DNA of 64,000 nucleotides, from positions 186,001 through 250,000 of the IMG/VR virus record IMGVR_UViG_3300028840_001395; one strand, given 5' to 3'. The notes under the pieces are model-generated. The model was not told where the DNA came from. It saw only the letters and a list, made by a program, of their open reading frames with translations, and searched no databases. This document shows, piece by piece, positions 5,072 to 56,268 of this stretch; position 1 is the first letter of the stretch, and every line of letters starts with the position of its first letter. The translations under genes were made by a program, and so were the position numbers.

Positions 5072-5305
5072 TTACCTCCGCAGGTTGGCTGCCTGGGCGA
5101 CGAGCCTGTCCGTAGCATCCTGCTTGGACTCGAACGGAAAAGAGTCCGAATGCGTCGGGATCATGTTCCACGTCGCCGCCCACTTCTTCGTCCTGGGGTG
5201 ACGGGACACGATACCGATGAACTCGCTCCCCCGGAACACGTCATGGGCCTCGACGCCCTGGGCGTCCACCTCGATGCGGAGCTTGAACGTCAACTTGCCG
5301 GGCAT
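5072..5305 (-). CDS. Small hypothetical protein
   Basis: MPGKLTFKLR...; coupled to the upstream gene. Confidence 0.6.
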   Translation of the reverse strand: MPGKLTFKLRIEVDAQGVEAHDVFRGSEFIGIVSRHPRTKKWAATWNMIPTHSDSFPFESKQDATDRLVAQAANLRR

Positions 5306-5799
5306 CACGATCTCCGAACCTCGGAGCCATCGGGCAGGATGACGATCACCTTGCGTGCCCCGCCCGGCGGCTTCTTCCCCAGCTCGCCCGCCGAATACCG
5401 CACCGTGGCCCACGTCCCACCGCCCCGCTTCTGCTTGGGTTCCTCCATCTCCTTCGGACAGGCGATGACCCACACCGACTCGTCCGCGATGTCGTGGTCA
5501 CGGGCCAGGAACTTCTTCGGAGGACGTTCCTCGACCGCGTGGCGGCACTCGGCCCGGAGGTCACGAACGAGCGGCGGGTGGAGAACCACGTCACCGCCGA
5601 AGGCCAGGACGAGCGTGTGGAACTCGGCGTCCGCACCCTCGCAGTCGCCGTGGTGACCCCGGATCGTCCGGTGGTTGAAAGGCTCGACGGAGCCGTCCGG
5701 GGAGCCGCCCGCCGCCATGCGCTGGAAGATCGCTCCCAGCGTGCGAAGCTGGGCCGCAGTGCAGCCCTGGCGAGTCCCGGTGAAACCAATGTCGATCAC
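5305..5799 (-). CDS. SLOG-superfamily (YspA/DprA-like Rossmann fold) protein
   Basis: IGFTGTRQG, HHGDCEGADAEFH, RDHDIADES and GTWATVRY segments typical of SLOG proteins. Confidence 0.7.
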   Translation of the reverse strand: MIDIGFTGTRQGCTAAQLRTLGAIFQRMAAGGSPDGSVEPFNHRTIRGHHGDCEGADAEFHTLVLAFGGDVVLHPPLVRDLRAECRHAVEERPPKKFLARDHDIADESVWVIACPKEMEEPKQKRGGGTWATVRYSAGELGKKPPGGARKVIVILPDGSEVRRS

Positions 5800-5814
5800 G
5801 CATCACCTCCACCT

Positions 5815-5843
5815 AGACTACTCTGTCGGAAGGAGAAATAAGC
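5815..5843 (-). promoter_or_regulatory. Phage motif promoter copy 2
   Basis: GCTTAT-N17-TAGTCT then AGGTGGAGG RBS. Confidence 0.8.
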
Positions 5844-5849
5844 CCCAAG

Positions 5850-6147
5850 AAATGACGAAGCCCGCGCCTGGCGAGTCTTCCGGGGGTCGGAAGAGAGCCT
5901 GCTTGCGCGGGTCTCCGTAGCACCGGCATATCCAGAGAAGTCCAGATATGCCCGGCAGTGCCCTACCGGAGGGCAGTTTGTCTCATCCGGACTGCCCTCG
6001 CACCGACCCCCAGGCGTGTACGACCTCTCGCTCTAGCCTGGGGGCCTAGAACCGTGGGCCGGGACTTGCTAGAACCAGCGACCTCCGTGCAAAAGTAAGG
6101 CACCCTTCGATGAGGTGGGGGTTGGCAGCCCTTCACCTCGTGTGCTT
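5850..6147 (-). ncRNA. Putative structured ncRNA B (~300 nt), class unknown
   Basis: No credible ORF; own TAGTAT-type promoter without RBS; chain of stems (GAGGTG/CACCTC, CCCCCAGGC/GCCTGGGGG, GAGGGCAGT/ACTGCCCTC, CATATC/GATATG, TCTTCCG/CGGAAGA, CCCGCGC/GCGCGGG) ending in TTTCTT. Confidence 0.55.
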
Positions 6148-6154
6148 GACGCCT

Positions 6155-6184
6155 ATACTACTCTGTCCTGACAGAAAAGTAAGC
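6155..6184 (-). promoter_or_regulatory. Phage motif promoter copy 3 (TAGTAT variant, no RBS)
   Basis: GCTTAC-N18-TAGTAT. Confidence 0.75.
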
Positions 6185-6186
6185 CC

Positions 6187-6461
6187 AAGAAAACGCGATG
6201 CCCGCCGTGGTGGGCCTTCACTCAGGAGGGGTTGACGACAGGGAACCGACCACGCTCACGTCGGGAGCCTGCCGCCAGGAAGCCTCCGGCGAGGGAACCT
6301 GGGCGGGCACCGAGGGATGGTTTTGTTTAGGGGGTCATCCACCCCCTCATCAAACGTCGCGCCTCATGGCGCTTTTGAGAATACAATCTTCGGCCTAGAC
6401 CCCCACCTCCATGTCCTGCGGCACCCCGCAAGGCCCCACAGGCGGTCAACCTGGTGGGGCT
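6187..6461 (-). ncRNA. Putative structured ncRNA A (~270 nt), class unknown
   Basis: No credible ORF; own TAGTAT-type promoter; stems GCCCCAC/GTGGGGC, GCGCC/GGCGC, AGGGGGT/ACCCCCT, long-range TGCCCGCC/GGCGGGCA; loop GGTTGAC complementary to distal GTCAACC. Confidence 0.55.
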
Positions 6462-6467
6462 ACACCT

Positions 6468-6497
6468 ATACTACTCTGAAACCGCTGCGATGTAAGC
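6468..6497 (-). promoter_or_regulatory. Phage motif promoter copy 4 (TAGTAT variant, no RBS)
   Basis: GCTTAC-N18-TAGTAT. Confidence 0.75.
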
Positions 6498-6609
6498 CTC
6501 TAAAGATTCTGCGACCCTCGACCGTCACAGTTGGGGCGACAATTTAGAGGCGGGTGGTTTTACTTCTATCGGCGTAGGTATTGTGACAGTGCTATGAAGG
6601 GAGCAGAAT

Positions 6610-7050
6610 ATGAATGACTACAGCATCATCGAGACGAAGCCGGTCAACGTGGCCGTCATCGTCATCTTGTTCATCTTGCTGTTGTGCTTCGCGGGAGCGT
6701 CAGCGGTCTACTACACCAAGAGCCACCTGCTCGAAGTCGAGCTGGCTCACGAGCGCAGTGAGCACTTCAAGATGACCGACAAGGTGGAATACCTGGAACG
6801 CAAGGCCGAAGCCCTCCAGCACAACTACGTTGACCTGATTCTGACTGGCTACGTCCGGGTCGGCCCGAGTGACATGCGAGACCTGGTACAGCAGGCGCAG
6901 CATCTCCGGCAGGCTTCTCGGGAGAACTACCCGACCCATGAGGGTATCGGCGGCGGCGAGGATGAACTGGTCGCGGATCAGCCCAAGAAGGTCAAGCGGA
7001 AGGGGAAGAAGTCCCGCAAGTCCAAGCGCAAGGCCTCCCGCCGCCAGTAG
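6610..7050 (+). CDS. Membrane-anchored coiled-coil protein with basic C-terminal tail
   Basis: N-terminal hydrophobic helix VAVIVILFILLLCFAGA; K/R-rich tail; lone plus-strand gene in a minus-strand block. Confidence 0.7.
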   Translation: MNDYSIIETKPVNVAVIVILFILLLCFAGASAVYYTKSHLLEVELAHERSEHFKMTDKVEYLERKAEALQHNYVDLILTGYVRVGPSDMRDLVQQAQHLRQASRENYPTHEGIGGGEDELVADQPKKVKRKGKKSRKSKRKASRRQ

Positions 7051-8039
7051 AACCCGAACTCACCTTTCCCCACCCGCAGGGTGACGCGCCCGTCAGGCCC
7101 TCTGACGACGATAGCGTGGTCGGTGACCTTCTCCCGCACTCCGGCATAGGCCAGGAGGAGTTTTCGCACTACGGGGGACATGGGGGCGATTCTCGGCGTC
7201 CTGTGGATGGAGTGGAAGTTGAACTTGAGGAACGTCCCTTGGCGCGGGTCGAGGGGCCACGCCTTGACGGGGCCAGCGCCGGACAGCTTCTCGACCAGGA
7301 TGAGCGTGGGCTTCTCGCCCTCGGCCTGGATGATCAGGTCGCCCGGCTCGGCCCGCTGAAGGGCAGCGTTGATGGAGTCCTTGCGCTTGTGGTAGGCATC
7401 GTTCTCGGCCTTGCGCTTGGCCTCCTCCTCCGCATACTTGTACTGGGCGTTGATGCGCTCGAACTCCCGACGCATCTGGAACGCAGCCAACGACACGTTC
7501 TCGCCGTCCCCCTTCGCCTGGTCGCCCCTCTTGGGGTTGTCGTACTTGACGGGCGTGAGCGAGAGCCGGACCCTCCTGAACCTGTCCTCGTAGTGGGTCT
7601 TGCTCGGCGTGCGGTAGCGGATGATGACGGTGCTGCCCTTGGGCATGTTCAGCGCAGCCGCCTCCGACGTGTTGTAGGTCGCGGCGTCGAGGTCAGCGAG
7701 AAGGCGGCGCACCTTCTTGTTGAGCGACCCGCTGGGCTTCCGCTTCCACTTGCACAGCGGGATATCCTCGATGACGTGCTTCCACGCCCCGTGGATAGTG
7801 TCCGCATCCTCACGGGCCTTCTTCCCGTACATGTAGGGATACTGCTTGCCCAGCGCCTTCCCCTTGTGGCTGTTGCGGGGCCACGCCTCGATGCGGAAGG
7901 CCTCCTTCACGTCACCCCGCGCGTCCTTCTGGATGATGCAGATCAGGTCGAGCCGACCCTCGGGCCAGAGCGCCTGGAGCGCCTCGATGACCCGGTAGTC
8001 ATCGTTGATCTTGGCGAGAGCTTCAACCAGCTTGTTCAT
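6978..8039 (-). CDS. Hypothetical protein (353 aa)
   Basis: Long ORF, codon bias, ATGA overlap upstream. Confidence 0.75.
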   Translation of the reverse strand: MNKLVEALAKINDDYRVIEALQALWPEGRLDLICIIQKDARGDVKEAFRIEAWPRNSHKGKALGKQYPYMYGKKAREDADTIHGAWKHVIEDIPLCKWKRKPSGSLNKKVRRLLADLDAATYNTSEAAALNMPKGSTVIIRYRTPSKTHYEDRFRRVRLSLTPVKYDNPKRGDQAKGDGENVSLAAFQMRREFERINAQYKYAEEEAKRKAENDAYHKRKDSINAALQRAEPGDLIIQAEGEKPTLILVEKLSGAGPVKAWPLDPRQGTFLKFNFHSIHRTPRIAPMSPVVRKLLLAYAGVREKVTDHAIVVRGPDGRVTLRVGKGEFGFYWRREALRLDLRDFFPFRLTFLG

Positions 8040-12162: not shown

Positions 12163-13302
12163 ATGGCCAAGTCCAAGATCGAGAAGCTCGCGGCCCTGAT
12201 CGCCAAGGCCAAGGACGCGTACTACAACGGGAAACCCATCATGGGTGACCCCGAGTATGACGCGCTCGAAGACGAGCTGCGGAAGCTCGACCCGAGCAAC
12301 CCCGTCCTGGCGATGGTCGGTGCAGACCCGACCGGGAGCGGCTGGCCCAAGGTCAAGCACGAGATCCCGATGGGGTCGCTCCGCAAGGCCCAGGACTCCG
12401 ACGACATGGACAAGTGGTTCTCGACGCAGAGCGTCAACACGCCGGTCTGTGTCTCCGACAAGCTCGACGGCATCAGCATCGGCCTGCGCTACGAGAAAGG
12501 CAAGCTCGTCCAGGGCTTGACGCGGGGCGACGGCGACACGGGTGAGGACATCACCAGGAACGTCATGCTGATGCAGGGCGCGGTCAAGGTGCTCCCCAAG
12601 ACGGTCAAGGGCAAGCCCCTCCCCGACGTGGTGTACGTGCGGGGCGAGGTGGTGGTCAAGAAGTCCGACTTCGCCGCCAACTTCAAGGGCGACTCCAACC
12701 CGAGGAACACCGCGAGCGGGACGGCCAAGCGCCAGAGTGACCCGAGCAAGTGCAAGCACCTGACCATCCTCGCGTACCAGTGGCTCCCGGACGGCATGGC
12801 CCCGGAGTTCAAGTGCGACGAGTTCCACGCGCTGGTCGAGGCCGGGTTCCAAACCGCCAACTTCAAGGTCTGCAAGAACGCGGCCCAGGTACAGGCCTTC
12901 TACCAGGAGTACGTGGACAAGACCCGCGACTCCCTGGACTACCTGATCGACGGGCTCGTGGTGGACATCGATGACCGGGACGTGCGCGAGGGCAAGGGCA
13001 CCACGGACGGTCGGCCCAAGGGCGCGGTGGCCTACAAGTTCCCGCACGAGAAGAAGCCGACCACGCTCCGGAACATCCGCTGGCAGGTGGGCAACTCGGG
13101 GCGCATCACCCCGGTCGCAGAGTTCGACACCGTGAACCTGGCGGGCGCGAACGTGAGCCAGGCCAGCCTCCACACGGTCGAGCGTGTCAAGAAGTTGAAA
13201 TTGTTCAAGGGATGCCGTATCCTGGTGTCGCGGCGAAATGATGTGATTCCAATGGTGGAGGCAAACCTGGATGAAAACATCAACATCAGCGACTTCGAGT
13301 AG
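12163..13302 (+). CDS. ligA: NAD-dependent DNA ligase, N-terminal half (Ia, adenylation and OB domains)
   Basis: YYNG...DPEYD, KLDG adenylation motif, LTRGDGDTGEDIT, RGEV, DGLVV, AVAYKF, WQVGNSGRITPVA, RNDVIP; stops before the Zn finger. Confidence 0.93.
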   Translation: MAKSKIEKLAALIAKAKDAYYNGKPIMGDPEYDALEDELRKLDPSNPVLAMVGADPTGSGWPKVKHEIPMGSLRKAQDSDDMDKWFSTQSVNTPVCVSDKLDGISIGLRYEKGKLVQGLTRGDGDTGEDITRNVMLMQGAVKVLPKTVKGKPLPDVVYVRGEVVVKKSDFAANFKGDSNPRNTASGTAKRQSDPSKCKHLTILAYQWLPDGMAPEFKCDEFHALVEAGFQTANFKVCKNAAQVQAFYQEYVDKTRDSLDYLIDGLVVDIDDRDVREGKGTTDGRPKGAVAYKFPHEKKPTTLRNIRWQVGNSGRITPVAEFDTVNLAGANVSQASLHTVERVKKLKLFKGCRILVSRRNDVIPMVEANLDENINISDFE

Positions 13303-16812: not shown

Positions 16813-18489
16813 ATGGCAGAGAAGCTCAAGAGACGCGAGTTCCCGTCCGGCTACAACCCGGACGACTTCGAGTACAAGGGTCGCCCGGCCAACGACCAGG
16901 GCGACTTCGGCGGCGACGTGGGCATCGCGGACATGGCCTGCGTCGATCAGTTCGGAGAGAAGAACGCCAGCAAGTTCTACCACGGCGGCGTCGTCCAGGC
17001 GAACGACGGCACCTGGTTCCTCTACACGGAGTGGGGCCGCTGCAAGCCCGGCAACTCCTGGTCGGGTTCGTCCTGGACGGGCAACGCCCAGGACTTCCAG
17101 TTCGTCCGCTGCGGCTCCGAGGATGAGACCCGCGCCGAGTTCGCCAAGAAGATGGCGAGCAAGAACACCAAGCGCCTGACGCAGATCGACGTGGGCGGCA
17201 AGAAGGTGTGGGCGGGCAAGAAGGGCAAGGACGGCTACATCGTCCAGCAGCTTGCCACCCGCGAGAAGGGCCTCCCCGACGCCCTCCGCATCAAGGACAA
17301 CTCGGGCGTCGGCTCCGCCGCCAACGGTGGCAACGGCAAGACGGCGAAGCCGAAGGCCAAGGGCAAGAAGGCCAAGGCCGCGAAGCCGACCCGCAAGTTC
17401 GACCAGCAGGTCGTGTCCCTCGCTTCGTCGCTGGTCGGCGGCACGCAGACCTACACCCGGTCGCTCTCGGCGGCGTCCGGCGTCACGCCGACGATGAACG
17501 CCATCGAGGAGGTCAGGAACGACCTGATCCCCGCCGCGATGGAGCGCATCAAGACGGTCGGTGACGACGTGAGCGCCCAGGTGCGGGACAACAAGCTCGT
17601 CGCCATCTCCAAGATGGTCGCCGCGATGGTTCCGCGCCCCATCCCGCGCAAGGGCCAGAGCGAGGAGGACGCGATCCTCTCCGGCGGCAACATCCTGGTC
17701 TTGCAGCAGGACTTGGACGCCTTCGAGGCCGCGCTCCTGAACGAGGACTTCGAGCAGGAGGCCCCCGACACCACGGTCAACCCGGACACGCTGCTCAACG
17801 CCCGGCTGTCCTACCTCGACCCCAAGGGTGACGGCAAGTGGGTCGCCCAGGCCTTCGCCAAGATGACCGCCAACCGGCACGGCTACATCCGGGGCCGGAT
17901 GAACGTGCGGCACATCTTCGCCGTCGAGCGCCCCGACCGCGACGCCCGGTTCATGAAGTGCGTCAAGCAGATCGCGGCCAAGCGCAAGGGCCGGTTCAGC
18001 CTGACGGCGAACCTCCAGCCCCGCTCGCGGAACGACCTGAACGGCATCGGGGACGACTATGGCCTGGCGAACGTGGTGCTGGCCATCCACGGCACCCGGC
18101 CCGTCAACATCGCCCCCATCATGGGGACGAACTTCCGACTGCCGCGCAGTCTGCCCGGCGCGCAGATCACCGGGGCCAACTTCGGTCACGGGGTGTACTT
18201 CGCCACGGACTGGAAGAAGTCCTACGGCTACACGGGGCGCGGGTACTGGGGGCACTCGGGCGGCGACATCCGCAACCGAGGGTGCTTCATGTTCCTCTGC
18301 GACATGGCGATGGGCGACCCCTACCGCGCCCCCTCGACCGGCTCATGGAGCCAGCCCCCGCAGGGCAAGGACTCCGTGTTCGGCGTCGGCGGCGACCGAG
18401 GCCACCGGCTGGAGAACGACGAACACGTCATCTTCAACCCGGACTACCAGCGCATCCGCTACCTGGTCGAGTTCGACTGGCTGACCTAG
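16813..18489 (+). CDS. PARP-like ADP-ribosyltransferase: WGR domain + helical regulatory domain + PARP catalytic domain
   Basis: SKFY...LYTEWGR (WGR); IHGT, NFGHGVYFATDWKKSYGY, MFLCDMAMG, DSVFG, NDEHVIFNPDYQRIRYLVEF (H-Y-E triad). Confidence 0.88.
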   Translation: MAEKLKRREFPSGYNPDDFEYKGRPANDQGDFGGDVGIADMACVDQFGEKNASKFYHGGVVQANDGTWFLYTEWGRCKPGNSWSGSSWTGNAQDFQFVRCGSEDETRAEFAKKMASKNTKRLTQIDVGGKKVWAGKKGKDGYIVQQLATREKGLPDALRIKDNSGVGSAANGGNGKTAKPKAKGKKAKAAKPTRKFDQQVVSLASSLVGGTQTYTRSLSAASGVTPTMNAIEEVRNDLIPAAMERIKTVGDDVSAQVRDNKLVAISKMVAAMVPRPIPRKGQSEEDAILSGGNILVLQQDLDAFEAALLNEDFEQEAPDTTVNPDTLLNARLSYLDPKGDGKWVAQAFAKMTANRHGYIRGRMNVRHIFAVERPDRDARFMKCVKQIAAKRKGRFSLTANLQPRSRNDLNGIGDDYGLANVVLAIHGTRPVNIAPIMGTNFRLPRSLPGAQITGANFGHGVYFATDWKKSYGYTGRGYWGHSGGDIRNRGCFMFLCDMAMGDPYRAPSTGSWSQPPQGKDSVFGVGGDRGHRLENDEHVIFNPDYQRIRYLVEFDWLT

Positions 18490-29345: not shown

Positions 29346-29854
29346 GCCCACCCACGTCCATAGAGCGCACTCATGATCTTTTTCACGCACTGGGACACCG
29401 TATCTTGCGGTGTCAGGCGGAGATCGTGTCCTTTGGGCTTCTCGAAGGGGTCGTCAACCCCGGTGAAGTGAGGGAGATCGCCCCGTCTGGCAGCCTCCCA
29501 CATCCCCTTCACATCACGTTCCTCGCAGACCTCGGTAGGGGCGTCCATCCAGACCAGAATCACCCGGTCGAGCACCCTCTGAATATCTTCGCGGTCCTTC
29601 TCATAGGGTGTGATGTTGGCGGCGACAACACAGATTCCCTGACGGTTGACGACCCCAGCCACCTCACGGACACGCCGGAGGTTCTCCCTGCGGTCAGGCA
29701 AACTGAAGCCCAGGTCAGAACACAACCCTGTCCGCACAGCGTCCCCGTCGAGGGACAAGCACGGGGAGGGAAGAGAGGGAACCAGAACGCGGGCAATCGT
29801 GGTTTTGCCTGAGCATGGAAGGCCCATCAACCAGACGGTGAATCCGTACTTCAC
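29342..29854 (-). CDS. cysC: Adenylyl-sulfate (APS) kinase
   Basis: [52 protein letters not shown]. Confidence 0.93.
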
Positions 29855-30888
29855 TCGGACTCTTTCCCCGCCAACTTCAGGTCGTGGGCCACCATGAGCC
29901 GCACGAGTTCCTCGAACTTGACGGAGGGTGTCCATCCGAGGCTGTCCGCTGCCTTGGAAGCGTCACCCAGTAGCTCCACGACATCCGTGGGCCGGAAGTA
30001 TCTCGGGTCAACCTGAACGCGGACTCGCCCACGTTCGTCAACCCCGTGACGATGAACCCCCTCACCCAAGAACTCCAGGGGCATCCCAGCACACGCGAAC
30101 GCCTCCCGGCAGAAGTCCTCGACCGAGTGGTCCTCACCCGTGGCCAGCACGTAGTCCTCGGGTGCGTCCTGCTGGAGCATCCGCCACATGCCCTCCACGA
30201 ACTCGGGAGCGTATCCCCAGTCCCGGCGGGCAGCCAGGTTACCCAGGTAGAGGCAATCCTGTAGGCCGTGCTTGATGCGACCCACGGCCCGAGTGATCTT
30301 CCGGGTGACGAAGGTCTCGCCTCGACGCTCCGACTCATGGTTGAACAGGATGCCGTTGCAGGCGTAGAGGCCGTAGGCTTCCCGGTAGTTCACCGTCACC
30401 CAGTAAGCGTACAGCTTGGCCGCAGCGTAGGGGCTGCAAGGACGGAAAGGTGTGCTCTCGCTCTGGGGTGACTCCTGCACCTTGCCATACAGCTCCGAGG
30501 TCGAAGCCTGGTAGAAGCGGGTCTTGATTCTGGCGTCCTTGATCGCGTCGAGCAGGCGAATGGTTCCCAGTCCCGTGACTTCAGCGGTGTACTCGGGCAC
30601 CTCGAAGCTGACCTTGACGTGACTCTGCGCCGCCAGGTTGTAAATCTCGTCCGGTTCCAGGCGCTCAATCAGGCGGGAGATGTTCGACCCATCCGTCAGG
30701 TCGCCGTAGTGCAGGAACAGCGTGCGGTCGTTGACGTGGGGGTCTTGATAGAGATGGTCGATGCGAGCCGTGTTGAAGGAGGACGAGCGACGGATGATGC
30801 CGTGAACCTCGTAGCCCTTGGCCAGCAGCAGTTCAGCCAGGTACGATCCGTCCTGGCCGGTGATTCCTGTGATGAGCGCCTTCCTCAT
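29851..30888 (-). CDS. gmd: GDP-mannose 4,6-dehydratase
   Basis: [61 protein letters not shown]. Confidence 0.97.
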
Positions 30889-31793
30889 GCGTGCCTCTTG
30901 AACCAGTCGTAGGTCTTGCGAATGCCGTCCTCCAGCGAGGTCTGTGCCTGCCAGCCCAGATCCCGTAGTCGGCTCACGTCGAGCAGCTTCCGGGGCGTCC
31001 CGTCCGGCATGTCGGTGTCCCAGAGGATGTCACCCTCGTATCCCACCACTTCCTTCAGCAGGGAGGCCAGTTCCGCAATCGTGAGATCTTCACCCACCCC
31101 GACGTTGACGAAGTTGTCCCGTCCGTCCGCATCGAAGTGCTCCATCAGGAACACCAGAGCGTCGGCCAGGTCATCCACGTAGAGGAACTCCCGGCGGGGT
31201 GCCCCCGTCCCCCACAGAGTCACCGAGGGCAATCCTGCGACTTTGGCATCGTGGAAGCGCCGCAGTAGGGCGGGCAGGACGTGGCTCCCGTGGGGGTCGA
31301 AGTTGTCGCCGGGGCCGTAGAGGTTCGTGGGCATCGCGGCGATGAAGTTGGTGCCGTGCTGCCGGTTGTAGCTCTGGCACATCAGGATGCCCGCGATCTT
31401 GGCGATGGCGTAGGCGTCGTTGGTCGGCTCCAGTGGCCCGGTCAGGAGGTGATCTTCTTGCATCGGTTGCGGCGCGAGCTTGGGATAGATGCAGGATGAC
31501 CCGAGGAACAGCAGCTTGCGGACACCGTGGCGATAAGCTGCATCGATCACGTTGGTCTGGATCTGGAGGTTGACCCGAAGGAAGTCCGCCGGGTAGGTGT
31601 CGTTGGCCAGAATCCCGCCCACCTTGGCTGCTGCGAGGAATACACCTTCGGGCTGCTCCTCGGAGAAGAACTCATCCACCGCCTGCGGGTCGGTGAGGTC
31701 GAGCTGGTCACGGTCGCGGACGAGGGGCGGTGTTGGGAGCCTCCGACACAAGGCGGACCCGACGAGGCCCTTATGACCGGCTACATACCACAT
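30885..31793 (-). CDS. fcl: GDP-L-fucose synthase
   Basis: [60 protein letters not shown]. Confidence 0.96.
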
Positions 31794-32482
31794 CACAGGT
31801 CTCGTGGAGCCTGCGGGGCGACCGGTTTCTCCCGGCCCTGTGCCCTCTCCACATCCTTTGCACTGCTCAGCATACACTGGTCACAGTGGAGCGGGAGATC
31901 GCCAATCTTCTCTTTCCAGTCGGGGTTGTCCTCCAGCTTGAGGCCCTTCCCGAGCGGAACACAGCAGGGATAAACGAACCCGTCCAGGCAAATGGTCGTG
32001 GTGTACTTGTTATTGCAGTCTCGTGGGTCTTGCCCAGGAGCCGACCAATGCACCGTCTTGGCCTCGGCTAGCTGGACACGCCCCTCGCAGTAGTGCCGGA
32101 GTTCCTGGATGGTGTGAGTGTTGCTCTTGCATCCTGGGTGGGTCTCGGAGGTGAGGACAGGGACTCGCACGGCATCGAAGTAGTCGAGGATGTCCAAGTG
32201 ATCAAGGATCAGATCCCCGTTGGTGGCCAAGAAGATCTTGTCGTAGGAATAGCCCTCACTGACGGCCTTGACCACCTCCTTCAGGCGAGGGTGAAGCAAA
32301 GGCTCCCCTCCCGTGATGCAGAGGTTGGGGATGTGGCCGATCAGGGGGGCCAGCTTCATGAGGAAATCCACATCCCAGTGCTGCGCCTTCCTGTGAGGGA
32401 TCCGAAAGCTACACGAGGGGCATTTCCTGTTACACGCGGTCGTGATCATCAGAGCCAGCAAGTGGAGGGGTGCTGTAGCCAC
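31793..32482 (-). CDS. Radical SAM protein with short SPASM/twitch-like C-terminal region
   Basis: CNRKCPSC (CxxxCxxC), [15 protein letters not shown]-terminal Cys cluster. Confidence 0.85.
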
Positions 32483-32483
32483 T

Positions 32484-33146
32484 TCAGCCCTCCTCGACAG
32501 GGGCATTGAGATCTTCCACGATGGCTACCACCTCTCGATACAAGAGATGGGCGGCTCCCTTTCCAAGGTGTATTCCATCCTCGGTAAATCCCTCCAAGAT
32601 GGCCCCCTCGGAGTCCACCACCTTGCTCCAGAGATCGCAGTAGCTCACTCCTCGGTTGCGGCATTCCTGCGCCAACAAGTCGTTGACCTTGATCGTCAGT
32701 TCCCGCCGTTCCTCCAAGCTGCCTTCACAGGGGAAATTGCGATTACGGCTGTTCATCGCCGGACTCACACTTAAAACGAATGACTGAGACTTGGTAAGCC
32801 TGGAAAATTCGGTGATGGTGTTCAGGTAAGGATGGACGAGCTTGGGCAGGGTTTCTGATCCCTGCTGTTCTGTGATACGGACGAGATGGCACCGCACATC
32901 AATCTCTCCGGACACCCATGCGATAACACTACCTGGGACAATCCTCGGGAGCCAGTTCCAAGAGTCCTCGCCAATACCTGCTTCCTTGATGGAAGCAAGA
33001 CCTTGAACCCCATCTCGGCCCACCCGGTGCATTGTCACAGGGCCAAGATGATGGACACACCCCTTATTGGCCAGGGGGAGGAACAACTGAGTATGACTAT
33101 CCCCGATAGCATGGAGATTCTGGATTCTGGTGTATTCCTGGCTCAA
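32484..33146 (-). CDS. SGNH/GDSL-like hydrolase (possible O-acyl modifying enzyme)
   Basis: IGDSH, GEIDVRCH, DGIHL; TTG start inferred. Confidence 0.7.
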   Translation of the reverse strand: MSQEYTRIQNLHAIGDSHTQLFLPLANKGCVHHLGPVTMHRVGRDGVQGLASIKEAGIGEDSWNWLPRIVPGSVIAWVSGEIDVRCHLVRITEQQGSETLPKLVHPYLNTITEFSRLTKSQSFVLSVSPAMNSRNRNFPCEGSLEERRELTIKVNDLLAQECRNRGVSYCDLWSKVVDSEGAILEGFTEDGIHLGKGAAHLLYREVVAIVEDLNAPVEEG

Positions 33147-33156
33147 GAGGTACCTC

Positions 33157-33765
33157 TTACTCGAACTTGTAACCGAACCGCTCCAAGTCCTCTGCGAAGA
33201 TCCTCTCCAAGAGCGCCCGTGATTCGTCGTCGTAGTAGTCCCGGTAGTCCTTCTTCCGTTGGGTGATGTTGACGTGGGGGAACTCGATCCTCGGGAGGCC
33301 CATCCGCTTCCGAAGATCGTGGACACAGGTGGGCAGCTCCTCGAACTTGAGCACCACATCCACGATCTGCTGACCATCCTCGTCCGTGACGAACTCGGTC
33401 AGCGTGGCATAGGAGTTGACCCCGTAGACCCGAGGCTCCTTGGTCTTCATCTCGTACCAGCGCAGGTACTCTGCGAGGCTCTTGCCCTGCATGAACTTGT
33501 GGAAGTTGTGGCCCGGCTTCTGGACGATGTAGAAGTAGGTGGAAAGCATCCAGTCGAAGGGATTGCGGACCATCAGGAACTTCAAAGCATCGTTCCACTC
33601 TTGAATCCGGCCCTTCGACTCGAACCACTTCTTCACGTCCCGAGGCAGAACGTGCCCACCCAGGATATCATCGCCACAACCCTCGAACACCTTCCGAAGG
33701 GACATCCCCCCTGTGCGGAAGATGTGGAAGAACAGGTAATTGTCGTCAGCATTGAAAAGAGCCAC
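33157..33765 (-). CDS. Sulfotransferase family 2 protein
   Basis: FFHIFRTGGMSL (PAPS loop), VRNPFDWMLSTY, KFEEL, DYRDYYD, DLERFGYKF. Confidence 0.85.
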   Translation of the reverse strand: MALFNADDNYLFFHIFRTGGMSLRKVFEGCGDDILGGHVLPRDVKKWFESKGRIQEWNDALKFLMVRNPFDWMLSTYFYIVQKPGHNFHKFMQGKSLAEYLRWYEMKTKEPRVYGVNSYATLTEFVTDEDGQQIVDVVLKFEELPTCVHDLRKRMGLPRIEFPHVNITQRKKDYRDYYDDESRALLERIFAEDLERFGYKFE

Positions 33766-33806
33766 GGGTATATCCTTTCGGGTTCTCGGTCAGTTTGTCG
33801 TCCACC

Positions 33807-34541
33807 TTACTTCCGAATGAGCACGAACCCTGCACTCAGATAGGGACGCCTCGCTGACGGAAGGCTGTTGGTCTGTATGTCATCGTAGAACTCCCGAGCC
33901 TGCTCCCGATACGCCTCGGTGTCCGGCAGATCGGTCGGCTCGGCTACCGTGGCCAAGTCCTCCACGGCTGCGAACAGATCACGGAAAGCGTCCGCATCGA
34001 AGTTGAACTGCTCGGGCCAACTTTGGTGGGGTTCCGGCCACTCCCCTTGCTGGTAGTAAGTGGCCACCTCAAAGGCCGGGACAGTCACCACGAGGGGAGC
34101 ACCGGGCTTCAGGAGTGACAGCAGGTTCCTGACGATTCGCAGAATCTTGTCCCAGTCGTTGTGCTCGATGGCACTGAGGCTCAGGATGCCATCGAAGGAG
34201 CCGGGGTCAAGCATGGGAGTATCTTCCAGATCCGATTGGATCAGGGTGGCCCGAGTGATGCAGTCCTGGTGGTGATGCCCTGGCTTGACATCGACGTTCA
34301 CAGCTTCGCCGTAGTTCTCAGCCAGGAAGTGCTGCATCGAACTCTGACCACCTCCAGCATCCATCACACGGGCCTTGTCGTGCGGCTGCTGGACGTAGGT
34401 AGCCAGCTTCTCACAAGCCCAGGAGTACTCTGCCGTGTAGGGCCAACGATCTGGCCACTTATACCCAGGACGCCGCTTCTCTCGAATCACAGCATGTTGC
34501 TGAAGAACGTCTTCCACACGGTAGTCGAGGGGGATAAGCAT
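33807..34541 (-). CDS. Class I SAM-dependent methyltransferase
   Basis: RVMDAGGG, FDGILSLSAIEH, LLKPGAPLVVTVP. Confidence 0.8.
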   Translation of the reverse strand: MLIPLDYRVEDVLQQHAVIREKRRPGYKWPDRWPYTAEYSWACEKLATYVQQPHDKARVMDAGGGQSSMQHFLAENYGEAVNVDVKPGHHHQDCITRATLIQSDLEDTPMLDPGSFDGILSLSAIEHNDWDKILRIVRNLLSLLKPGAPLVVTVPAFEVATYYQQGEWPEPHQSWPEQFNFDADAFRDLFAAVEDLATVAEPTDLPDTEAYREQAREFYDDIQTNSLPSARRPYLSAGFVLIRK

Positions 34542-34546
34542 GAGAT

Positions 34547-37500
34547 TTACCTCTTGATTCCGAGAAGATTCAGAGAGACGGTGTCGTAGGATGACCAGTC
34601 CCTCACCGCCTTGATCTCCGGTACTTCGTTACTCTTCCATTCCTTGATATCCTTGAACCCTGCTGCGATCAGCAGCTTGGTCAGGGACTCCTTCACGAAG
34701 GTCTGCTTGTGGCGGTCGGGTTCCTCCGCCGCCTTGCGGAAGTCTCCGAACAGGGGAGCGTTGGGGTCTTTTCCGAACTTGTGCGACTCGACGCAGTTGG
34801 CCACGATGAGTCGCAGATCAGGAACCGCGACCCGAAGGATACCTCCAGGACGTAGCGCCTGGTGCCAGTTCCGTAGGATGTCGAGGGTTTCCTCGGCGTA
34901 GAAGTGCTCAAGGACATGGCAGGCGTAGATCTCGGAATAGGCCGCGCTCGGGAGAGCTTCGTGGGCGTCGAGCACCTGATCGACTGCCGGGCCGGGCCTC
35001 AAGTCCGTGTTGATGTAGCCCTTGATGTGCTTGTCGCCACAGGCGATGTGGAGCTTCAGTTCTTTCTGGGGCGGGGTGGGTTCCACGATGTCTACCTCGG
35101 GAATCGAGACAGTTTCATGGTTTCCGGTTGGGAGCGCCAAGCCCCTCTGTCGGCGTTCCTCCCGGACGATGGCGAGAAGTTGTTCCATTGCAACGTCCCA
35201 CGTCCAGTGGTCACGGGCCAGTTCGTATCCGGCCTGCTGAATGACAGCCCTGTCCGCATCCCGTTCGGGTCTCAACCAGTCCCGGAGTAGCTCGACAAGC
35301 TCCTCGTTGTCCTTCCAGATGACGCAGTTGACCCCATCTTGCAGACCGTAGCCTTCCATGTCATCGAAGTACTGGACGGCACAGAAGCCCTTGGTGATGA
35401 GGGAGTCGGGAAGTCGGTCGGAAGTGTAGCGGCGGAGCTTCTGGAAGAGGGACTGCACGACCACGACGCGGGCGACGGAATGAAGCTCTGCACGCCGAGC
35501 CCGTGCGATAAACGGGTGTGATAGGATGGGCTGGCGGAGCTTGTTCCAGGAATGTCCGTAGCAGACATACATCCCCGGAAGGGCCTTCTCGATGTCCAGC
35601 GCCATCTGAACGCGAGGTGCCACCCCCGGCCCCTTGTGGAACCCAGTGTGAGGAGACCCTGTGAAGCAGGCCTTCCCAGCCGCTTTCCAGTCCTTCGGAT
35701 TCCCCTGACGAGGCCCGTTGACGGTGGTGTCCGTCCCGATAATATGGTGCCCAGTCTTGGCCCGGACACCCATCTCTCTGAGCTTCTCGGCGTAGGTACA
35801 CTCCGACGAGAGGAACAGGTCAAGTTCCTTGCACTGATCTGCCTGCCACGCCTCAACCGGCTCGTCAATGTCCGTCCGGACATCCCCCGTCCACGACACG
35901 ATGAGGCAGTTCGGAGGGGCGAGCTTCCGCATCTGACGGATGATGCCCGAGTTGAAAGCCCTGTTCCCCTGCACCTGCATCCAGATCAGAGTTGGCTGGT
36001 GCGTCCTGATCAGCTCATAGACCTCTTCATACATCCGATTGAGACCGACCTTCTGCCTTCGTTCGTTCCAACGGATCGTCTGATATGGCCCCATCCTTGC
36101 CAAAGCCAGACAGTGACCATGTTGGGCTTCATGCGACCCGGCAAGAGAGACGTGCAGGACTCTCTCGGGAGGCCCGGCTTCAATCGGTGACCGCCGGTGA
36201 GGCATCCCCCGCTTAGGGTTGTACACGTTGGGCCAACCCATCGGGTCTCGGGTGATAGGCCTCGCGTACTTCTTGTTGTATTTCTTATGCCACGCATCCC
36301 GGTGCTTATTGAGGCGCGTTGAGTTGGCTTCCCTGTTGGGATCGTCCAGAGTCTCATTCACCAGGTCGATGAGCGTCACATCAGGCTTACGCTCCATCTT
36401 CCAACCCAGCCGATGTCCTCGCAGCCCCCAGGCCGAGTCTCCCCCGTAGGTGTGATGTGTCCGGGTGTTTTCGTCGCCCCAGAAGGCCCCGAAGCCTTCC
36501 GCGATGATGTCCTCGCACATCTCCCGGCGAGCAACGACCTGGTTGGGGTGAGGAAGACCAGGGGCTTGAGGGAAGTCCATCTTCATGTAGGTCTTACCCC
36601 GGTCACGGCTCATGTGAAAAGCCACGGCCCCGAGAGTTGGGTCGGAGTCCAGGTGCCGTATCGCGTTCGCTATCGACTTCCCTTCGATGATGATGTCGTC
36701 GTTGATCTGACAGATGAACCTGCCCTTGGACGCTTCATACGCCCGGTTGAAAGCCGGAATCGCCCCCTCCATCCCTCCCAGGATGGGCCGGATATCAGAC
36801 TGCTCCTTCATCCACGTCATGGATGTGTCGGACTCATCGCCGTAGGCGATGACGATCTCGTAGGTGTAGTCGGAATCCTTGAGGCTCTCGCGGACAGATG
36901 CCACGCATTCCTTGAGCATCTCCGGTCGGTTGACTGTTCCCAGAATCACCGAGCAGTCGATAGGAGCCGCCGTGACCATGCGAGAGATATCCCGCTGCAG
37001 ATCAGGATGGAGGGGGGGAGGGGCAGGCTCGGGGATAACCTCGGGAGGCTTCTGTGGATGCCTGTTCTTCCACTTTCGCACGGAGTCCCGCATCGGCTTC
37101 CGACCGATGCGGGAAGGAGCTTCCTCGACCGGAACCGGAGGCTGATCCCCCCGGAGAGACTTCAGGAGCTTCCTCATGTCCTCCGGAATGTCCTCTGCAT
37201 CATCGAGGCTACCCTGACCGATGATCTCGAAGGAGCCCTTGCGTGAACGACCTTCTCGCTCCAACACCGCCCGGTTCCAGATGTTGTCCGCGTGCTGCAA
37301 GCAGACGATGAGGTCGATCTCCTTGGTGATATCCTTGAACACCGGGCGGGTGTTCATCCCCTTGCGGAAAGCTGCGGCCATCGGGCCGTCTTTGCCCCGT
37401 GCCCGCTCCGGCCAACCCCCGACCTTGCGGAGATGCTCTCCTGCGAAGGAGATGCTCGTCCCGATGAGTCCCTGCTCGGCCCGGCCTGTCCACCGCATCA

Positions 37501-38524: not shown

Positions 38525-39546
38525 CAGAACCAATCCAGGCCGAACACGGCGTTGCGGACTTCATCCCAGTAGGCGAACTCTCGACACTCATCCAAGGAGT
38601 ACGTCTTGCGAAGCTCCGACCCGAACGTCGTGATGCGGGCCAACAGCCCAAGCTCGTTCTGGAAGTGCCACCACTCGGCTCCGCCCGCGTTGCCCGAAGT
38701 GAAGAAGCTCCGCCGGGCGCGGATGCGGTTGAAGCCGTGCTTGAGGGCGACATCGGTGAAGCTGAAGAACACCCCCTGCACCCGCTTGGTTGTCGGGATG
38801 TGGACGGTATTGCCCCCCGAGTCCTTCTGCTCGATGACCTGCCATGCCTCGATGGTCATCTTACCACCGGCCACGGAGCCGCCGTAGAGCTTCTTGATGA
38901 GCGCATCCTTGTCCAACGAGGACCGGCACCAGACCTCCCAGTGTCGGTCGGAGTGCGGGTCGGCTTCGATGATGTAGGGGTCTGTCTCGGGATCGGCCAT
39001 CCCTGACAAGGGAGCGAGGTCGAAGGCCCGTCCGACATAGTGGAAGGACTTCTTCGAGCGGTTGGCGTTCGACCCCGCCGTGAGCAACCTCCGGCCACCC
39101 GCCGAGGTGACGATGCCACCGAGGTCGTGAACCTCGTCATAGAGGGCCTGGTAGAAGGGTGCGATGTCTGACCGGAGAACGGTGCCCTCGTTGCCCTGGC
39201 CGTTGAACTGGTCAGCCGGGCAGGCGGGCCAGTAGGGCTTGGTCAGGTTGAGCTGGCTGCCGTCATCGTCGCTCGGCTCGATCTCGGTATCGGGGGTCAC
39301 ATCTACGTTGTAGTCGATGTGGTAGGCTGCTCCCCCGTCGCCCAGAGCGAAGTTGTAGGCCGAAAGGGTGCTGTCCCCCACCTCACCATCCGAAAGGAGC
39401 CCAGAGGCCGTCTGGAAGGCGCTGACGGCTCTTTCTGTCCCCTCTCCGAACACCCCATCTGCGATGCCGGGATGATAGCCCAGGTAGGCGAGTCCTAGCT
39501 GGAGGTTGCGGACATCCTCTCCGCGTGATCCTATCCTCAGAATCAT
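38524..39546 (-). CDS. Peptidoglycan-binding + M15-like zinc peptidase (endolysin or virion lysin)
   Basis: PG_binding_1 pattern LRIGSRGEDVRNLQ...DGVFGEGTERAVSAFQ...DGEVG; SFHYVGRAFD and EWWHFQ. Confidence 0.85.
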   Translation of the reverse strand: MILRIGSRGEDVRNLQLGLAYLGYHPGIADGVFGEGTERAVSAFQTASGLLSDGEVGDSTLSAYNFALGDGGAAYHIDYNVDVTPDTEIEPSDDDGSQLNLTKPYWPACPADQFNGQGNEGTVLRSDIAPFYQALYDEVHDLGGIVTSAGGRRLLTAGSNANRSKKSFHYVGRAFDLAPLSGMADPETDPYIIEADPHSDRHWEVWCRSSLDKDALIKKLYGGSVAGGKMTIEAWQVIEQKDSGGNTVHIPTTKRVQGVFFSFTDVALKHGFNRIRARRSFFTSGNAGGAEWWHFQNELGLLARITTFGSELRKTYSLDECREFAYWDEVRNAVFGLDWF

Positions 39547-55942: not shown

Positions 55943-56033
55943 TGGTCGCTCCGACAGGAATCGAACCTGCGATGCGGGTGTCACCCCGAGCGGATTTAGA
56001 GTCCGCCTCCTTCGACCACTCGGACACGGAGCG
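55943..56033 (-). tRNA. Amber-suppressor tRNA (anticodon CUA), class II, encoded CCA
   Basis: CGCTCCG/CGGAGCG acceptor + A73 + CCA; D arm TCC-GAGTGGTCGAA-GGA; GCGGA-CTCTAAA-TCCGC; 19-nt variable arm; GCAGG-TTCGATT-CCTGT. Confidence 0.9.
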
Positions 56034-56043
56034 ATTGAAGTGT

Positions 56044-56258
56044 GGCGCGTGACAGGAGTCGAACCTGCATAACCCTCCCCACAAGGGGGAAGGCAAAGAA
56101 GAGGCCAGGCCTGGTCAAGAGAGGGGCCTGCGACATCCACGCCGAGCGGGCCTAGCAGGCCCGTGTCCCGACTCATCCCATCTGCATGGCGATCCACCAT
56201 GCGTGCCCTTCTTCTCCCCCGGTTAAAGCGGGGGGCCTCACCGTTGGGCTACACGCGC
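56044..56258 (-). tRNA. Ochre-anticodon (UUA) tRNA-Gln-like RNA with 148-nt insertion in the variable region
   Basis: GCGCGTG/CACGCGC acceptor; GCC-CAACGGTGA-GGC D arm; CCCCG-CTTTAAC-CGGGG anticodon arm; GCAGG-TTCGACT-CCTGT T arm; no canonical encoded CCA (C73-ACA). Confidence 0.65.
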
Positions 56259-56268
56259 ACTGTCCTCT

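What the first reader, a model, noticed from the sequence alone, without database searches (positions are those of the whole stretch)
5850..6497. Two tandem, independently promoted, ORF-less structured RNAs (~270 and ~300 nt)
Seen: a ~650-nt gap in an otherwise gene-packed genome with two promoter copies, each followed by no RBS but by a dense series of 6-10 bp helices and ending in a GC stem plus TTTCTT. RNA A has a possible pseudoknot (loop GGTTGAC with GTCAACC) and an A-rich single strand (AAACAAAA). I do not recognise tmRNA, RNase P, SRP, 6S, intron or riboswitch cores. Inference: novel phage ncRNA classes.
Basis: partly seen in the sequence, partly recalled or inferred. Interest (0 to 1): 0.75.

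Follow-up and report, generated by a model that had tools for sequence, protein, structure and literature searches.

The report
Two conserved structured RNAs in huge phage
A 435-kb uncultivated phage carries two neighbouring genes of about 280 and 308 bases, each with its own promoter and terminator, that encode folded RNAs rather than proteins; related phages keep the folds while the sequences drift, they match no known RNA family, and their function is unknown.

Summary
Window 5800-6609 is an ORF-poor gap between divergent genes. On the minus strand it carries three tandem copies of a phage-wide promoter-like motif (47 copies in the 435,804-bp genome). The copy at 5812-5825 drives a gene. 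The copies at 6152-6165 and 6465-6478 have no ribosome-binding site or ORF after them. Each is followed by about 280-310 nt that ends in a long GC-rich hairpin plus UUUCUU.

Seven or eight syntenic relatives from metagenomes (protein identity 57-77%) keep both units; one lower-GC lineage keeps only RNA A.
- **Base pairing:** RNA B has 88% of cells paired, against 40-49% with slid partners, and 31 pairs with compensatory changes against 5-11. This includes a pseudoknot. The RNA A 3' rod has 86-90% paired against 32-53%.
- **Strand and coding:** G·U pairs far outnumber A·C, so the structure belongs to the promoter-sense transcript. There is no codon periodicity, and indels are not multiples of three.
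- **Known families:** Rfam 15 matches nothing in the window or the relatives. The phage's tmRNA lies elsewhere.

No RNA-seq run was listed, so expression is inferred. Function is unknown. My best guess is trans-acting, stable protein- or ribosome-binding RNAs. The RNA B 5' hairpin loop looks like a tRNA-Gly(GCC) anticodon loop.

The parts
6465..6498 (-). Promoter-like element of RNA A: GGCTTAC (6492-6498), spacer, then CAGAGTAGTATAGG (6465-6478). This is the TAGTAT variant of the phage-wide motif.
   Evidence: the TAGTATAGG variant is kept in the relatives that have RNA A (one base differs in three of them: L012, L021, L026)
6187..6466 (-). RNA A, about 280 nt. The 5' end is inferred to lie at or just after the GG of the motif. 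The 3' end is inferred at the U tract.
   Evidence: conserved in L018, L019, L022, L008, L012 and L026, plus the partial L021
6433..6460 (-). RNA A P1 hairpin: a covarying 6-7 bp stem, an invariant AGG/CCU top and a 7-nt loop UUGACYN.
   Evidence: 51 of 56 stem cells pair in 8 homologues, with 2-5 standard pair types per position
6404..6410 (-). Near-invariant GGAGGUG (Shine-Dalgarno-like) in RNA A, with no conserved start codon or ORF after it.
   Evidence: G57 G58 G60 G61 T62 invariant; my reading of the homologues
6315..6340 (-). RNA A hairpin hp2 (GGAUG/CAUCC stem; the loop varies and in the window holds the A-rich stretch).
   Evidence: GAUGC/GCAUC, GAUAC/GUAUC and GGGAUACA/UGUAUCCC in the relatives
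6197..6311 (-). RNA A 3' rod: a ~115-nt irregular hairpin (base GGUGCCCGCC/GGCGGGCAUC; internal GGAGG/CCUCC) that also serves as the terminator stem.
   Evidence: 86-90% of cells paired against 32-53% with slid partners; 10-13 pairs changed on both sides against 1-6
6187..6193 (-). U tract UUUUCUU after the RNA A rod.
   Evidence: T-rich run conserved in the relatives
6152..6185 (-). Promoter-like element of RNA B: GGCTTAC (6179-6185) and CAGAGTAGTATAGG (6152-6165).
5846..6153 (-). RNA B, about 308 nt.
   Evidence: conserved in L018, L019, L022, L008, L007 and L015, plus the partial L026
6112..6139 (-). RNA B P1 hairpin: a covarying lower stem, a GGG/CCC top and the loop CUGCCAA (6122-6128), which resembles an anticodon loop (U33, GCC, R37).
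   Evidence: the loop is CUGCCAA in 6 homologues, UUGCCAU in one and CUGCCGA in one; the phage's own tRNA-Gly(GCC) loop is UUGCCAA
6008..6061 (-). RNA B pseudoknot domain. Helix H3a pairs 6057-6061 with 6021-6025. Hairpin H3b spans 6030-6052. Its loop (6037-6043) pairs with 6008-6014.
   Evidence: helices 3-6: the pseudoknot stem is 97.9% paired and 3 of its 7 pairs changed on both sides; H3b is 91.8% paired with 3 such pairs
5965..6007 (-). RNA B helix GUCGG/CCGRU enclosing hairpin H4 (GAGGGCAG/CUGCCCUC in the window, GGUGUG/CACACC in the relatives; the loop holds a conserved CCGGA).
   Evidence: helices 7-8
5919..5962 (-). RNA B hairpin H5.
   Evidence: helix 9: 97.6% paired, 4 of 6 pairs changed on both sides
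5847..5918 (-). RNA B 3' rod and terminator (ACGGAG.CCCGCGC ... GCGCGGGCUUCGU), then UUUCUU (5847-5852).
   Evidence: helices 11-13: 93% paired, 9 of 13 pairs changed on both sides in the base stem
5812..5845 (-). Third tandem promoter copy (TAGTCTAGG form), followed by GGAGGTG and the GTG start of gene 5305-5799.

Best explanation
The gap holds two autonomous genes for stable, highly structured non-coding RNAs, both on the minus strand. RNA A is about 280 nt (6466 to 6187). RNA B is about 308 nt (6153 to 5846).

Shown:
- Each unit starts at its own copy of the promoter-like motif that also precedes many of the phage's protein genes and at least one tRNA gene.
- Each ends in a long GC-rich hairpin plus a U tract.
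- A third promoter copy then drives the downstream operon.
- The units, their boundaries and their helices are conserved with compensatory changes in a small clade of related uncultivated phages.
- RNA B contains a pseudoknot and a 5' hairpin whose 7-nt loop resembles a tRNA-Gly(GCC) anticodon loop.
- RNA A has a covarying 5' hairpin, a near-invariant GGAGGUG and a ~115-nt 3' rod.

Inferred:
- The motif is a promoter and the hairpins terminate transcription.
- The RNAs accumulate as discrete species. The 5'-proximal hairpin and the 3' rod would protect them from degradation.
- They act in trans as binding platforms or decoys for a protein or for the translation machinery. This would fit a phage that also carries 71 tRNA-like genes, a tmRNA and suppressor tRNAs.

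I put about 0.85 on the claim that these are conserved structured RNA genes, and about 0.5 on the trans-acting binding role.
For: - Promoter motif: 47 copies in the genome, oriented with the downstream gene; 29 have an SD, a start codon and an ORF within 50 nt, and one precedes a tRNA.
- Tandem layout: the order and the TAGTATAGG variant are kept in the relatives.
- RNA B on a structure-blind MAFFT alignment: 88.2% of cells paired against 40-49% with slid partners; 31 pairs changed on both sides against 5-11; 0 of 500 shuffles reach the observed values. The pseudoknot is 97.9% paired.
- RNA A rod: 86.0% paired on the MAFFT alignment and 89.5% on the model-fitted one, against 32-53% with slid partners.
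- RNA A P1 hairpin covaries across 8 homologues.
- Strand: G·U against A·C is 51:14 in RNA B and 30:6 in the RNA A rod.
- Coding: substitutions show no 3-nt periodicity and indels are not multiples of three, while the neighbouring gene shows the periodicity.
- Folding energy is below shuffled sequence.
- No match to any of 4,227 Rfam families.
- The downstream gene has its own promoter, and the L012 lineage keeps RNA A alone, so the units are separable.
- The DNA is identical in three independent runs.
Against: - There is no expression evidence of any kind. No RNA run was listed, so the promoter, the terminators and the RNA ends are all inferred from sequence.
- Only 7-8 homologues exist, all from metagenomes and related to each other, so part of the covariation count reflects shared ancestry. 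No R-scape-type test was possible.
- The middle third of RNA A varies in sequence and in the number of hairpins.
- An alternative helix in RNA A (CCAGG/CCUGG) also covaries, so the 3' domain fold is not fully settled.
- No partner protein, target or phenotype is known. The neighbouring proteins have no Pfam or PHROG match.
Confidence: 0.7

Rival explanations
1. The two units act in cis as leaders that control transcription into the downstream operon. They could modify RNA polymerase as put-like processive antiterminators, or they could be attenuators that switch between terminator and anti-terminator folds.
For: - They sit directly upstream of the operon, on the same strand as it.
- Each ends in a terminator-like hairpin.
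- RNA A shows a covarying alternative helix.
- Both RNAs carry an upstream GGAGG that could compete for the CCUCC inside their 3' rod.
Against: - The operon has its own full promoter copy immediately after RNA B, and RNA B has its own after RNA A.
- The alternative helix leaves the base of the terminator stem and the U tract intact.
- The L012 lineage has lost RNA B without changing the rest of the layout.
- At 280-310 nt with 6-8 helices each, they are much larger than known put elements or attenuators (my knowledge).
Confidence: 0.12
2. They are very divergent members of a known RNA family, such as RNase P RNA, SRP RNA, 6S/Ms1, tmRNA, or GOLLD/ROOL/HEARO.
For: - The size range of 280-310 nt, the pseudoknot and the long rod are typical of such RNAs.
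- The phage invests heavily in translation-related RNAs.
Against: - Rfam 15 gives nothing relevant even at E <= 10 on 1 kb, and nothing at E <= 1 in seven homologous loci.
- ARAGORN places the phage's tmRNA at genome 90688-91048, not here.
- By my reading there is no RNase P CR-I/CR-V motif, no SRP domain IV motif, no T-arm or CCA end, and no large central bubble.
Confidence: 0.05
3. The region is only a stack of promoters and terminators, acting as an insulator between divergent operons. On this view the RNA products have no function of their own.
For: - Both the promoter copies and the terminator-like 3' rods are among the well-conserved parts.
Against: - Helices that are not part of any terminator are kept by compensatory changes. 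These are RNA A P1 and hp2, and RNA B P1, the pseudoknot domain, H4 and H5.
- The loop sequences UUGACYN and CUGCCAA are nearly invariant.
- Unit lengths are kept within about 20 nt across the relatives.
Confidence: 0.05
4. The region works at the DNA level, as a replication origin with primer transcripts or as a packaging or regulatory site.
For: - It is an intergenic region between divergent genes with tandem promoters, as at some phage origins (my knowledge).
- A unique conserved 60-nt element lies next to it.
Against: - G·U far exceeds A·C in the conserved helices, which only makes sense for one RNA strand.
- There is no GC-skew turning point near genome position 192 kb.
- There are no iterons or AT-rich unwinding stretches.
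Confidence: 0.03
5. The gap encodes small proteins.
For: - ORFs of 30-76 codons exist on both strands.
- RNA A has an SD-like GGAGGUG.
Against: - No ORF is conserved. The frames after GGAGGUG differ or are absent in the relatives (my reading).
- Substitutions are evenly spread over the three phases, and gaps are not multiples of three.
Confidence: 0.02

Closest known systems
Phage T4 stable RNAs C and D (species 1 and 2 RNAs)
   Same: They are phage-encoded, non-coding, stable small RNAs of unknown function, made alongside a phage tRNA set (my knowledge).
   Different: The T4 RNAs are about 120-140 nt and are processed from the tRNA cluster transcript. Here the RNAs are about 280-310 nt, lie roughly 70 kb from the main tRNA clusters, and each has its own promoter-like element and terminator. 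No sequence relation was tested or is expected.
GOLLD and ROOL large structured RNAs (Rfam RF01998, RF03087)
   Same: They are large, intricately folded RNAs of unknown function, often carried by phages or prophages that also carry tRNA genes (my knowledge).
   Different: They are 500-800 nt with different architectures. There is no Rfam match here.
6S RNA / mycobacterial Ms1
   Same: They are abundant rod-like RNAs that act by binding RNA polymerase. The RNA A 3' domain is a long irregular rod.
   Different: The rod here has no large central bubble. The 5' and 3' ends do not pair with each other. There is no Rfam match.
phi29 pRNA
   Same: It is a phage RNA with its own promoter whose sequence drifts while helices and loop-loop pairings covary (my knowledge).
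   Different: pRNA is about 120-174 nt and is restricted to phi29-like podoviruses with protein-primed DNA. There is no Rfam match and nothing here links these RNAs to packaging.
tRNA anticodon arm (tRNA-Gly GCC)
   Same: The RNA B P1 hairpin has a G-C stem top and a 7-nt loop YUGCCRN that keeps U33, the anticodon GCC and a purine at 37. The phage's own tRNA-Gly(GCC) loop is UUGCCAA.
   Different: The rest of RNA B has no D arm, T arm, acceptor stem or CCA end, and ARAGORN calls no tRNA or tmRNA here. The resemblance is 7 nt and could be chance.

Membership tests
tmRNA | A tRNA-like domain (acceptor stem with G3:U70, T arm, CCA end) plus a tag reading frame and pseudoknots. | tested here: not met
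   ARAGORN finds the phage's tmRNA at genome 90688-91048 and nothing in 5800-6609. No Rfam tmRNA family matches.
RNase P RNA | The conserved core (P4 pseudoknot with the CR-I and CR-V sequences), as modelled by Rfam RF00010, RF00011 and RF00373. | tested here: not met
   No match at E <= 10 on 5700-6700 or at E <= 1 in seven homologous loci.
6S RNA | A ~180-nt rod closed by the paired 5' and 3' ends, with a large central bubble. | tested here: not met
   No Rfam match. The predicted and covarying structure has separate 5' hairpins and a 3' rod with only small internal loops.
SRP RNA | Domain IV (helix 8) with a GNAR tetraloop and conserved symmetric and asymmetric loops. | tested here: not met
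   No Rfam SRP family matches.
GOLLD / ROOL / HEARO / OLE (large orphan bacterial and phage RNAs) | A match to the family covariance model. | tested here: not met
   cmscan against all 4,227 Rfam 15 models. At gathering threshold only a tRNA elsewhere in the window matched. The permissive hits in the region were three chance-level ones, E 1.6-2.9.
Riboswitch or cis-regulatory leader | It lies in the 5' UTR of the regulated gene, with no promoter between the element and the gene. | tested here: not met
   A full promoter-like motif separates RNA A from RNA B, and another separates RNA B from the gene.
Independent sRNA gene (promoter, structured non-coding body, intrinsic terminator) | Its own promoter. 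| tested here: inconclusive
   The motif is shared with 45 other sites in the genome, most of them in front of genes. Promoter activity was not measured, and no phage sigma factor or RNA polymerase was found.
Independent sRNA gene (promoter, structured non-coding body, intrinsic terminator) | No conserved reading frame. | tested here: met
Independent sRNA gene (promoter, structured non-coding body, intrinsic terminator) | Secondary structure kept by compensatory substitutions. | tested here: met
Independent sRNA gene (promoter, structured non-coding body, intrinsic terminator) | A discrete transcript is detected. | not testable with these tools
   No RNA sequencing run was listed for this DNA. 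Only DNA contigs were available.
Csr/Rsm-type protein-sponge RNA | Many A(N)GGA motifs displayed in hairpin loops. | tested here: inconclusive
   RNA B has four CGGA/GGGA sites (one in the H4 loop) and RNA A has three GGA sites, but most lie in stems or linkers (my reading). I did not look for a CsrA gene.

The most novel reading that the evidence does not exclude
RNA A and RNA B are the RNA parts of a phage system that reprograms host translation or counters tRNA-targeting defence. RNA B would present a tRNA-Gly(GCC) anticodon-arm mimic on a pseudoknotted scaffold, as a decoy for an anticodon nuclease, a modification enzyme or the ribosomal decoding site. RNA A would present an exposed Shine-Dalgarno-like GGAGGUG that engages 30S subunits. 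This would be a new class of translation-directed phage ribonucleoprotein, in a phage that also carries 71 tRNA-like genes, a tmRNA and two suppressor tRNAs.
Probability: 0.1. Interest if true: 0.85.

Novelty: new variant of a known kind. Interest (0 to 1): 0.6.

Why it matters
Large RNAs with many conserved helices and a pseudoknot are rare. When their functions have been solved, they have nearly always turned out to be ribozymes, RNP scaffolds or global regulators.

Huge phages are known for carrying tRNAs, tmRNAs and translation factors. Apart from those and CRISPR arrays, their non-coding RNA content is largely uncharted. Here there are two new candidate families with clear gene boundaries, a defined promoter class and comparative support. 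That makes them directly testable by metatranscriptomics, structure probing and pull-down.

If they act on translation or on tRNA-directed defence, they would add an RNA layer to how huge phages take over their hosts.

Tried and rejected
- **Phage genome collections:** BLAST of the gap and of a large window protein against 50,697 phage records gave no match.
- **IMG/VR:** a protein search, the promoter pattern, the flanking conserved element and two RNA-specific patterns found nothing beyond three chance promoter hits.
- **GTDB genomes:** the RNA B pattern gave one chance match inside a coding region of an Acidimicrobiaceae MAG.
- **Paralogues:** there are none within the genome, and RNA A and RNA B are not alignable to each other apart from the promoter and the 3' end.
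- **Covariance models:** R1 gives weak hits (E 0.002-0.4) on the RNA B terminator rods and on one insert in a tRNA-like gene. I read these as shared GC-rich rod features, not homology.
- **RNA A-RNA B pairing:** GAGGUGGGGGU in RNA A is complementary to ACCCCCACCUC in RNA B, but this is not kept in the relatives.
- **Long-range helices:** the RNAalifold helix joining RNA B P1 to the pseudoknot strand, and a GUGCCUUAC/GUAGGGCAC helix, are not supported outside the closest relatives.
- **Kissing contact:** a contact between the RNA B P1 loop and the H4 loop holds in only 3 of 7 homologues.
- **Neighbouring proteins:** they gave no functional clue.
- **Literature:** two full-text searches found no description of such RNAs.

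Full report
**Context.** The window is positions 186,001-250,000 of a single 435,804-bp, 62% G+C virus record with direct terminal repeats, rated complete. The same DNA, with no differences over 5300-7100, lies in contigs from three sequencing runs from sediment and seawater. It is therefore an uncultivated huge phage. ARAGORN finds 71 tRNA-like genes and a tmRNA elsewhere in the genome. No close relative exists in 50,697 deposited phage genomes or in IMG/VR.

**Checking the observation.** Positions 5800-6609 lie between gene 5305-5799 on the minus strand and gene 6610-7050 on the plus strand. CCTAKACTACTCTG occurs at 5812, 6152 and 6465. With up to two mismatches it occurs 18 times in the window against 0.29 expected, and the CCTAGACTACTCTG form occurs 47 times in the genome.

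Read in the direction of the downstream gene, the motif is bipartite: GGnCTTAYYT, twelve bases, then CAGAGTAGTCTAGG. In most copies a GGAGG-type ribosome-binding site and a start codon follow 8-25 nt later. By a strict automatic test, 29 of the 47 copies meet this. One copy precedes a tRNA gene. All three copies in the gap point leftward. Only the one at 5812 has an RBS and a gene after it. The copies at 6465 and 6152 carry TAGTATAGG instead of TAGTCTAGG. Each is followed by about 280-310 nt without a conserved ORF, ending in a long GC-rich hairpin and UUUUCUU or UUUCUU, with the next promoter copy immediately after.

**Relatives.** The two flanking proteins have homologues at 57-77% identity on short metagenomic contigs. 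Fetching these contigs, plus one DNA-pattern scan of JGI metagenomes, gave the homologue sets.
- **Both RNAs, syntenic gap of the same length (802-817 nt):** L008/L009/L023/L025, L018/L017, L019 and L022.
- **Partial copies:** L007, L015, L021 and L026.
- **RNA A only (470-nt gap):** L012/L013, a lower-G+C lineage.

Every locus that reaches far enough has the same order: promoter copy with TAGTATAGG, RNA A, T run, promoter copy with TAGTATAGG, RNA B, T run, promoter copy with TAGTCTAGG, RBS, gene. Sequence identity between the more distant homologues is about 60-68% mean column identity.

**RNA or protein.** Substitutions between close pairs are spread evenly over the three phases (for example 20/24/22 and 14/15/18). 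Gap lengths are mostly not multiples of three. The adjacent gene compared between the same genomes shows the usual third-position excess (30/14/45). The ORFs that exist in the window are not kept in the relatives. I conclude the region is non-coding.

**Structure of RNA B (window 6153 to 5846).** I counted a hand-derived structure on a structure-blind MAFFT alignment of seven homologues (A3). The result was 88.2% of 467 cells forming standard pairs, against 40-49% when every 3' partner is slid by 1-3 columns. There were 31 pairs with changes on both sides, against 5-11 for the slid controls. None of 500 column shuffles reached the observed values. The elements are:
- **P1 (6112-6139):** a 5' hairpin whose lower stem covaries (GAGGUG/CACCUC, GAG.GCG/CGC.CUC, GAAGUCGGGGG/CCCCCGACUUC, GUGGUG/CACCAC). 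Its 7-nt loop is CUGCCAA in six of eight homologues, UUGCCAU in one and CUGCCGA in one.
- **Pseudoknot domain (6008-6061):** the 9-nt loop of hairpin H3b pairs with a strand that lies 3' of the enclosing helix H3a. Both the hairpin stem (CUAG/CUAG against CCAG/CUGG) and the pseudoknot stem (CCCCCAGG/CCUGGGGG against CCACCAGG/CCUGGUGG, CCCACAGG/CCUGUGGG and CCUUCAGG/CCUGAAGG) change in a compensatory way.
- **H4:** enclosed by GUCGG/CCGRU.
- **H5.**
- **3' rod (about 65 nt):** 9 of the 13 base-stem pairs changed on both sides.

**Structure of RNA A (window 6466 to 6187).**
- **P1 (6433-6460):** forms in all eight homologues, with 51 of 56 stem cells paired and 2-5 standard pair types per position. 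It has an invariant AGG/CCU top and the loop UUGACYN.
- **Variable stretch:** it follows P1 and contains a near-invariant GGAGGUG (6404-6410) with no conserved start codon after it.
- **hp2:** a covarying hairpin (GGAUG/CAUCC).
- **3' rod (about 115 nt):** on the MAFFT alignment A4 it is 86.0% paired against 34-53% for the slid controls, with 10 pairs changed on both sides against 3-6. On an alignment fitted to a covariance model it is 89.5% paired, with 13 such pairs. The fitted figures lean towards the structure by construction.

**Unsettled points in RNA A.**
- A local helix CCAGG/CCUGG inside the rod also pairs in 94% of cells and has two compensatory positions. It excludes part of the rod. 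It may be a folding intermediate, a switch, or an effect of the few shared substitutions among related sequences.
It varies mostly by wobble pairs and competes with the lowest pairs of a rod helix. I rate it possible, not shown.
- The A-rich stretch is in the hp2 loop of the window only.

**Which strand, and RNA or DNA.** In the helices above, G·U cells outnumber A·C cells 51 to 14 in RNA B and 30 to 6 in the RNA A rod. That asymmetry is expected only if the selected structure forms in the transcript made from the promoter copies. The genome's cumulative GC skew shows no turning point near this position, and the gap has no iterons. I see no support for an origin or other DNA-level role.

**Comparison with known RNAs.**
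- **Rfam 15 on the window:** at gathering thresholds, the 4,227 models find only a tRNA elsewhere. With permissive settings on 5700-6700, only three chance-level hits appear, E 1.6-2.9.
- **Rfam 15 on the relatives:** seven homologous loci give nothing relevant at E <= 1.
- **tmRNA:** the phage's tmRNA is at genome 90688-91048.
- **Repeats in the genome:** the RNA A rod model does not recur elsewhere in the genome, apart from weak hits on the RNA B rod and one tRNA insert.
- **Other collections:** RNA-specific patterns find nothing in IMG/VR and one chance match in GTDB genomes.
- **Literature:** two full-text searches found no description.

The RNAs therefore fail the membership test for every family I considered. 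They are best described as two new candidate families, so far confined to one clade of uncultivated phages.

**How they probably work.** What is shown is the gene anatomy and the conserved folds. The rest is inference.
- Each unit has its own promoter copy and terminator, the operon downstream has its own promoter, and one lineage keeps RNA A without RNA B. A trans-acting product is therefore more likely than a cis leader.
- A 5'-proximal hairpin and a long 3' rod are what one expects of stable RNAs.
- The nearly invariant parts are loops and linkers: UUGACYN and GGAGGUG in RNA A, and CUGCCAA, CGGGAGG and the CCGGA loop in RNA B. This suggests recognition by a partner rather than catalysis.
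- The RNA B P1 loop obeys the anticodon-loop rules (U at position 2, GCC, then a purine) and matches the loop of the phage's own tRNA-Gly(GCC), which is UUGCCAA.
- With the Shine-Dalgarno-like motif in RNA A and the phage's large tRNA, tmRNA and suppressor set, this points loosely to the translation apparatus or to tRNA-directed enzymes as the partner. That step is a hypothesis, and I give it about 0.1.
- No phage sigma factor, T7-type polymerase or beta subunit was detected. The polymerase that reads the motif is unknown.

**Limits.**
- No RNA-seq run holding this DNA was listed, so expression, transcript ends and abundance are untested.
- The homologue set is small and phylogenetically related, so the counts of compensatory cells overstate the number of independent events.
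- The central part of RNA A could not be aligned structurally.

Noticed in passing
window 56043-56258 (-), next to 55946-56033 (-): When introns are allowed, ARAGORN calls a tRNA with anticodon UUA (reads the UAA stop) that carries a 140-nt insertion at position 38. It lies directly upstream of the tRNA with anticodon CUA (reads UAG). Both lie behind a TAGTATAG promoter variant at 56266-56279. Two suppressor tRNAs in tandem suggest stop-codon read-through or recoding in this phage. The insertion matched no Rfam intron model at gathering threshold.
   Followed up: partly
window 6536-6595 (+): A ~60-nt element (GCGACAATTTAGAGGCGGGTGGTTTTACTTCTATCGGCGTAGGTATTGTGACAG) lies upstream of gene 6610-7050. 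It is unique in the genome, yet it is the best-conserved stretch of the whole intergenic region in all relatives, and part of it survives in the low-GC lineage. It could be a different promoter class, an operator or a 5'-UTR element.
   Followed up: partly
whole genome; window copies at 1617, 5812, 6152, 6465, 9348, 11021, 11458, 11576, 14091, 15732, 16781, 19401, 44063, 44338, 44430, 51291, 56266, 57779: A bipartite promoter-like motif, GGnCTTAYYT-N12-CAGAGTAGTCTAGG, occurs 47 times and is often arranged as divergent pairs about 100 nt apart. No phage sigma70-type factor, T7-type polymerase or RNA polymerase beta subunit was detected, so what recognises the motif is open.
   Followed up: partly
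G000:C1:85246-122868, 90688-91048, 412787-412950: Outside the window there are two large tRNA clusters (about 67 genes), a tmRNA with tag ANDEAVLQAA, and two tRNA-like genes with 8-nt anticodon loops (GGGA) that could be frameshift suppressors.
   Followed up: no
window 6610-7050 (+): The 146-aa product has an N-terminal hydrophobic helix, a coiled-coil-like middle and a very basic Lys/Arg tail. It is always found divergent from RNA A in the relatives. It has no Pfam or PHROG match.
   Followed up: partly
window 29851-39546 (-), 16813-18489 (+), 12163-13302 (+): Three auxiliary gene sets were seen: a sugar-modification block (GDP-mannose 4,6-dehydratase, an epimerase, and a 1,328-aa protein with three glycosyltransferase domains and a methyltransferase domain), a PARP-like ADP-ribosyltransferase, and an NAD-dependent DNA ligase.
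   Followed up: no
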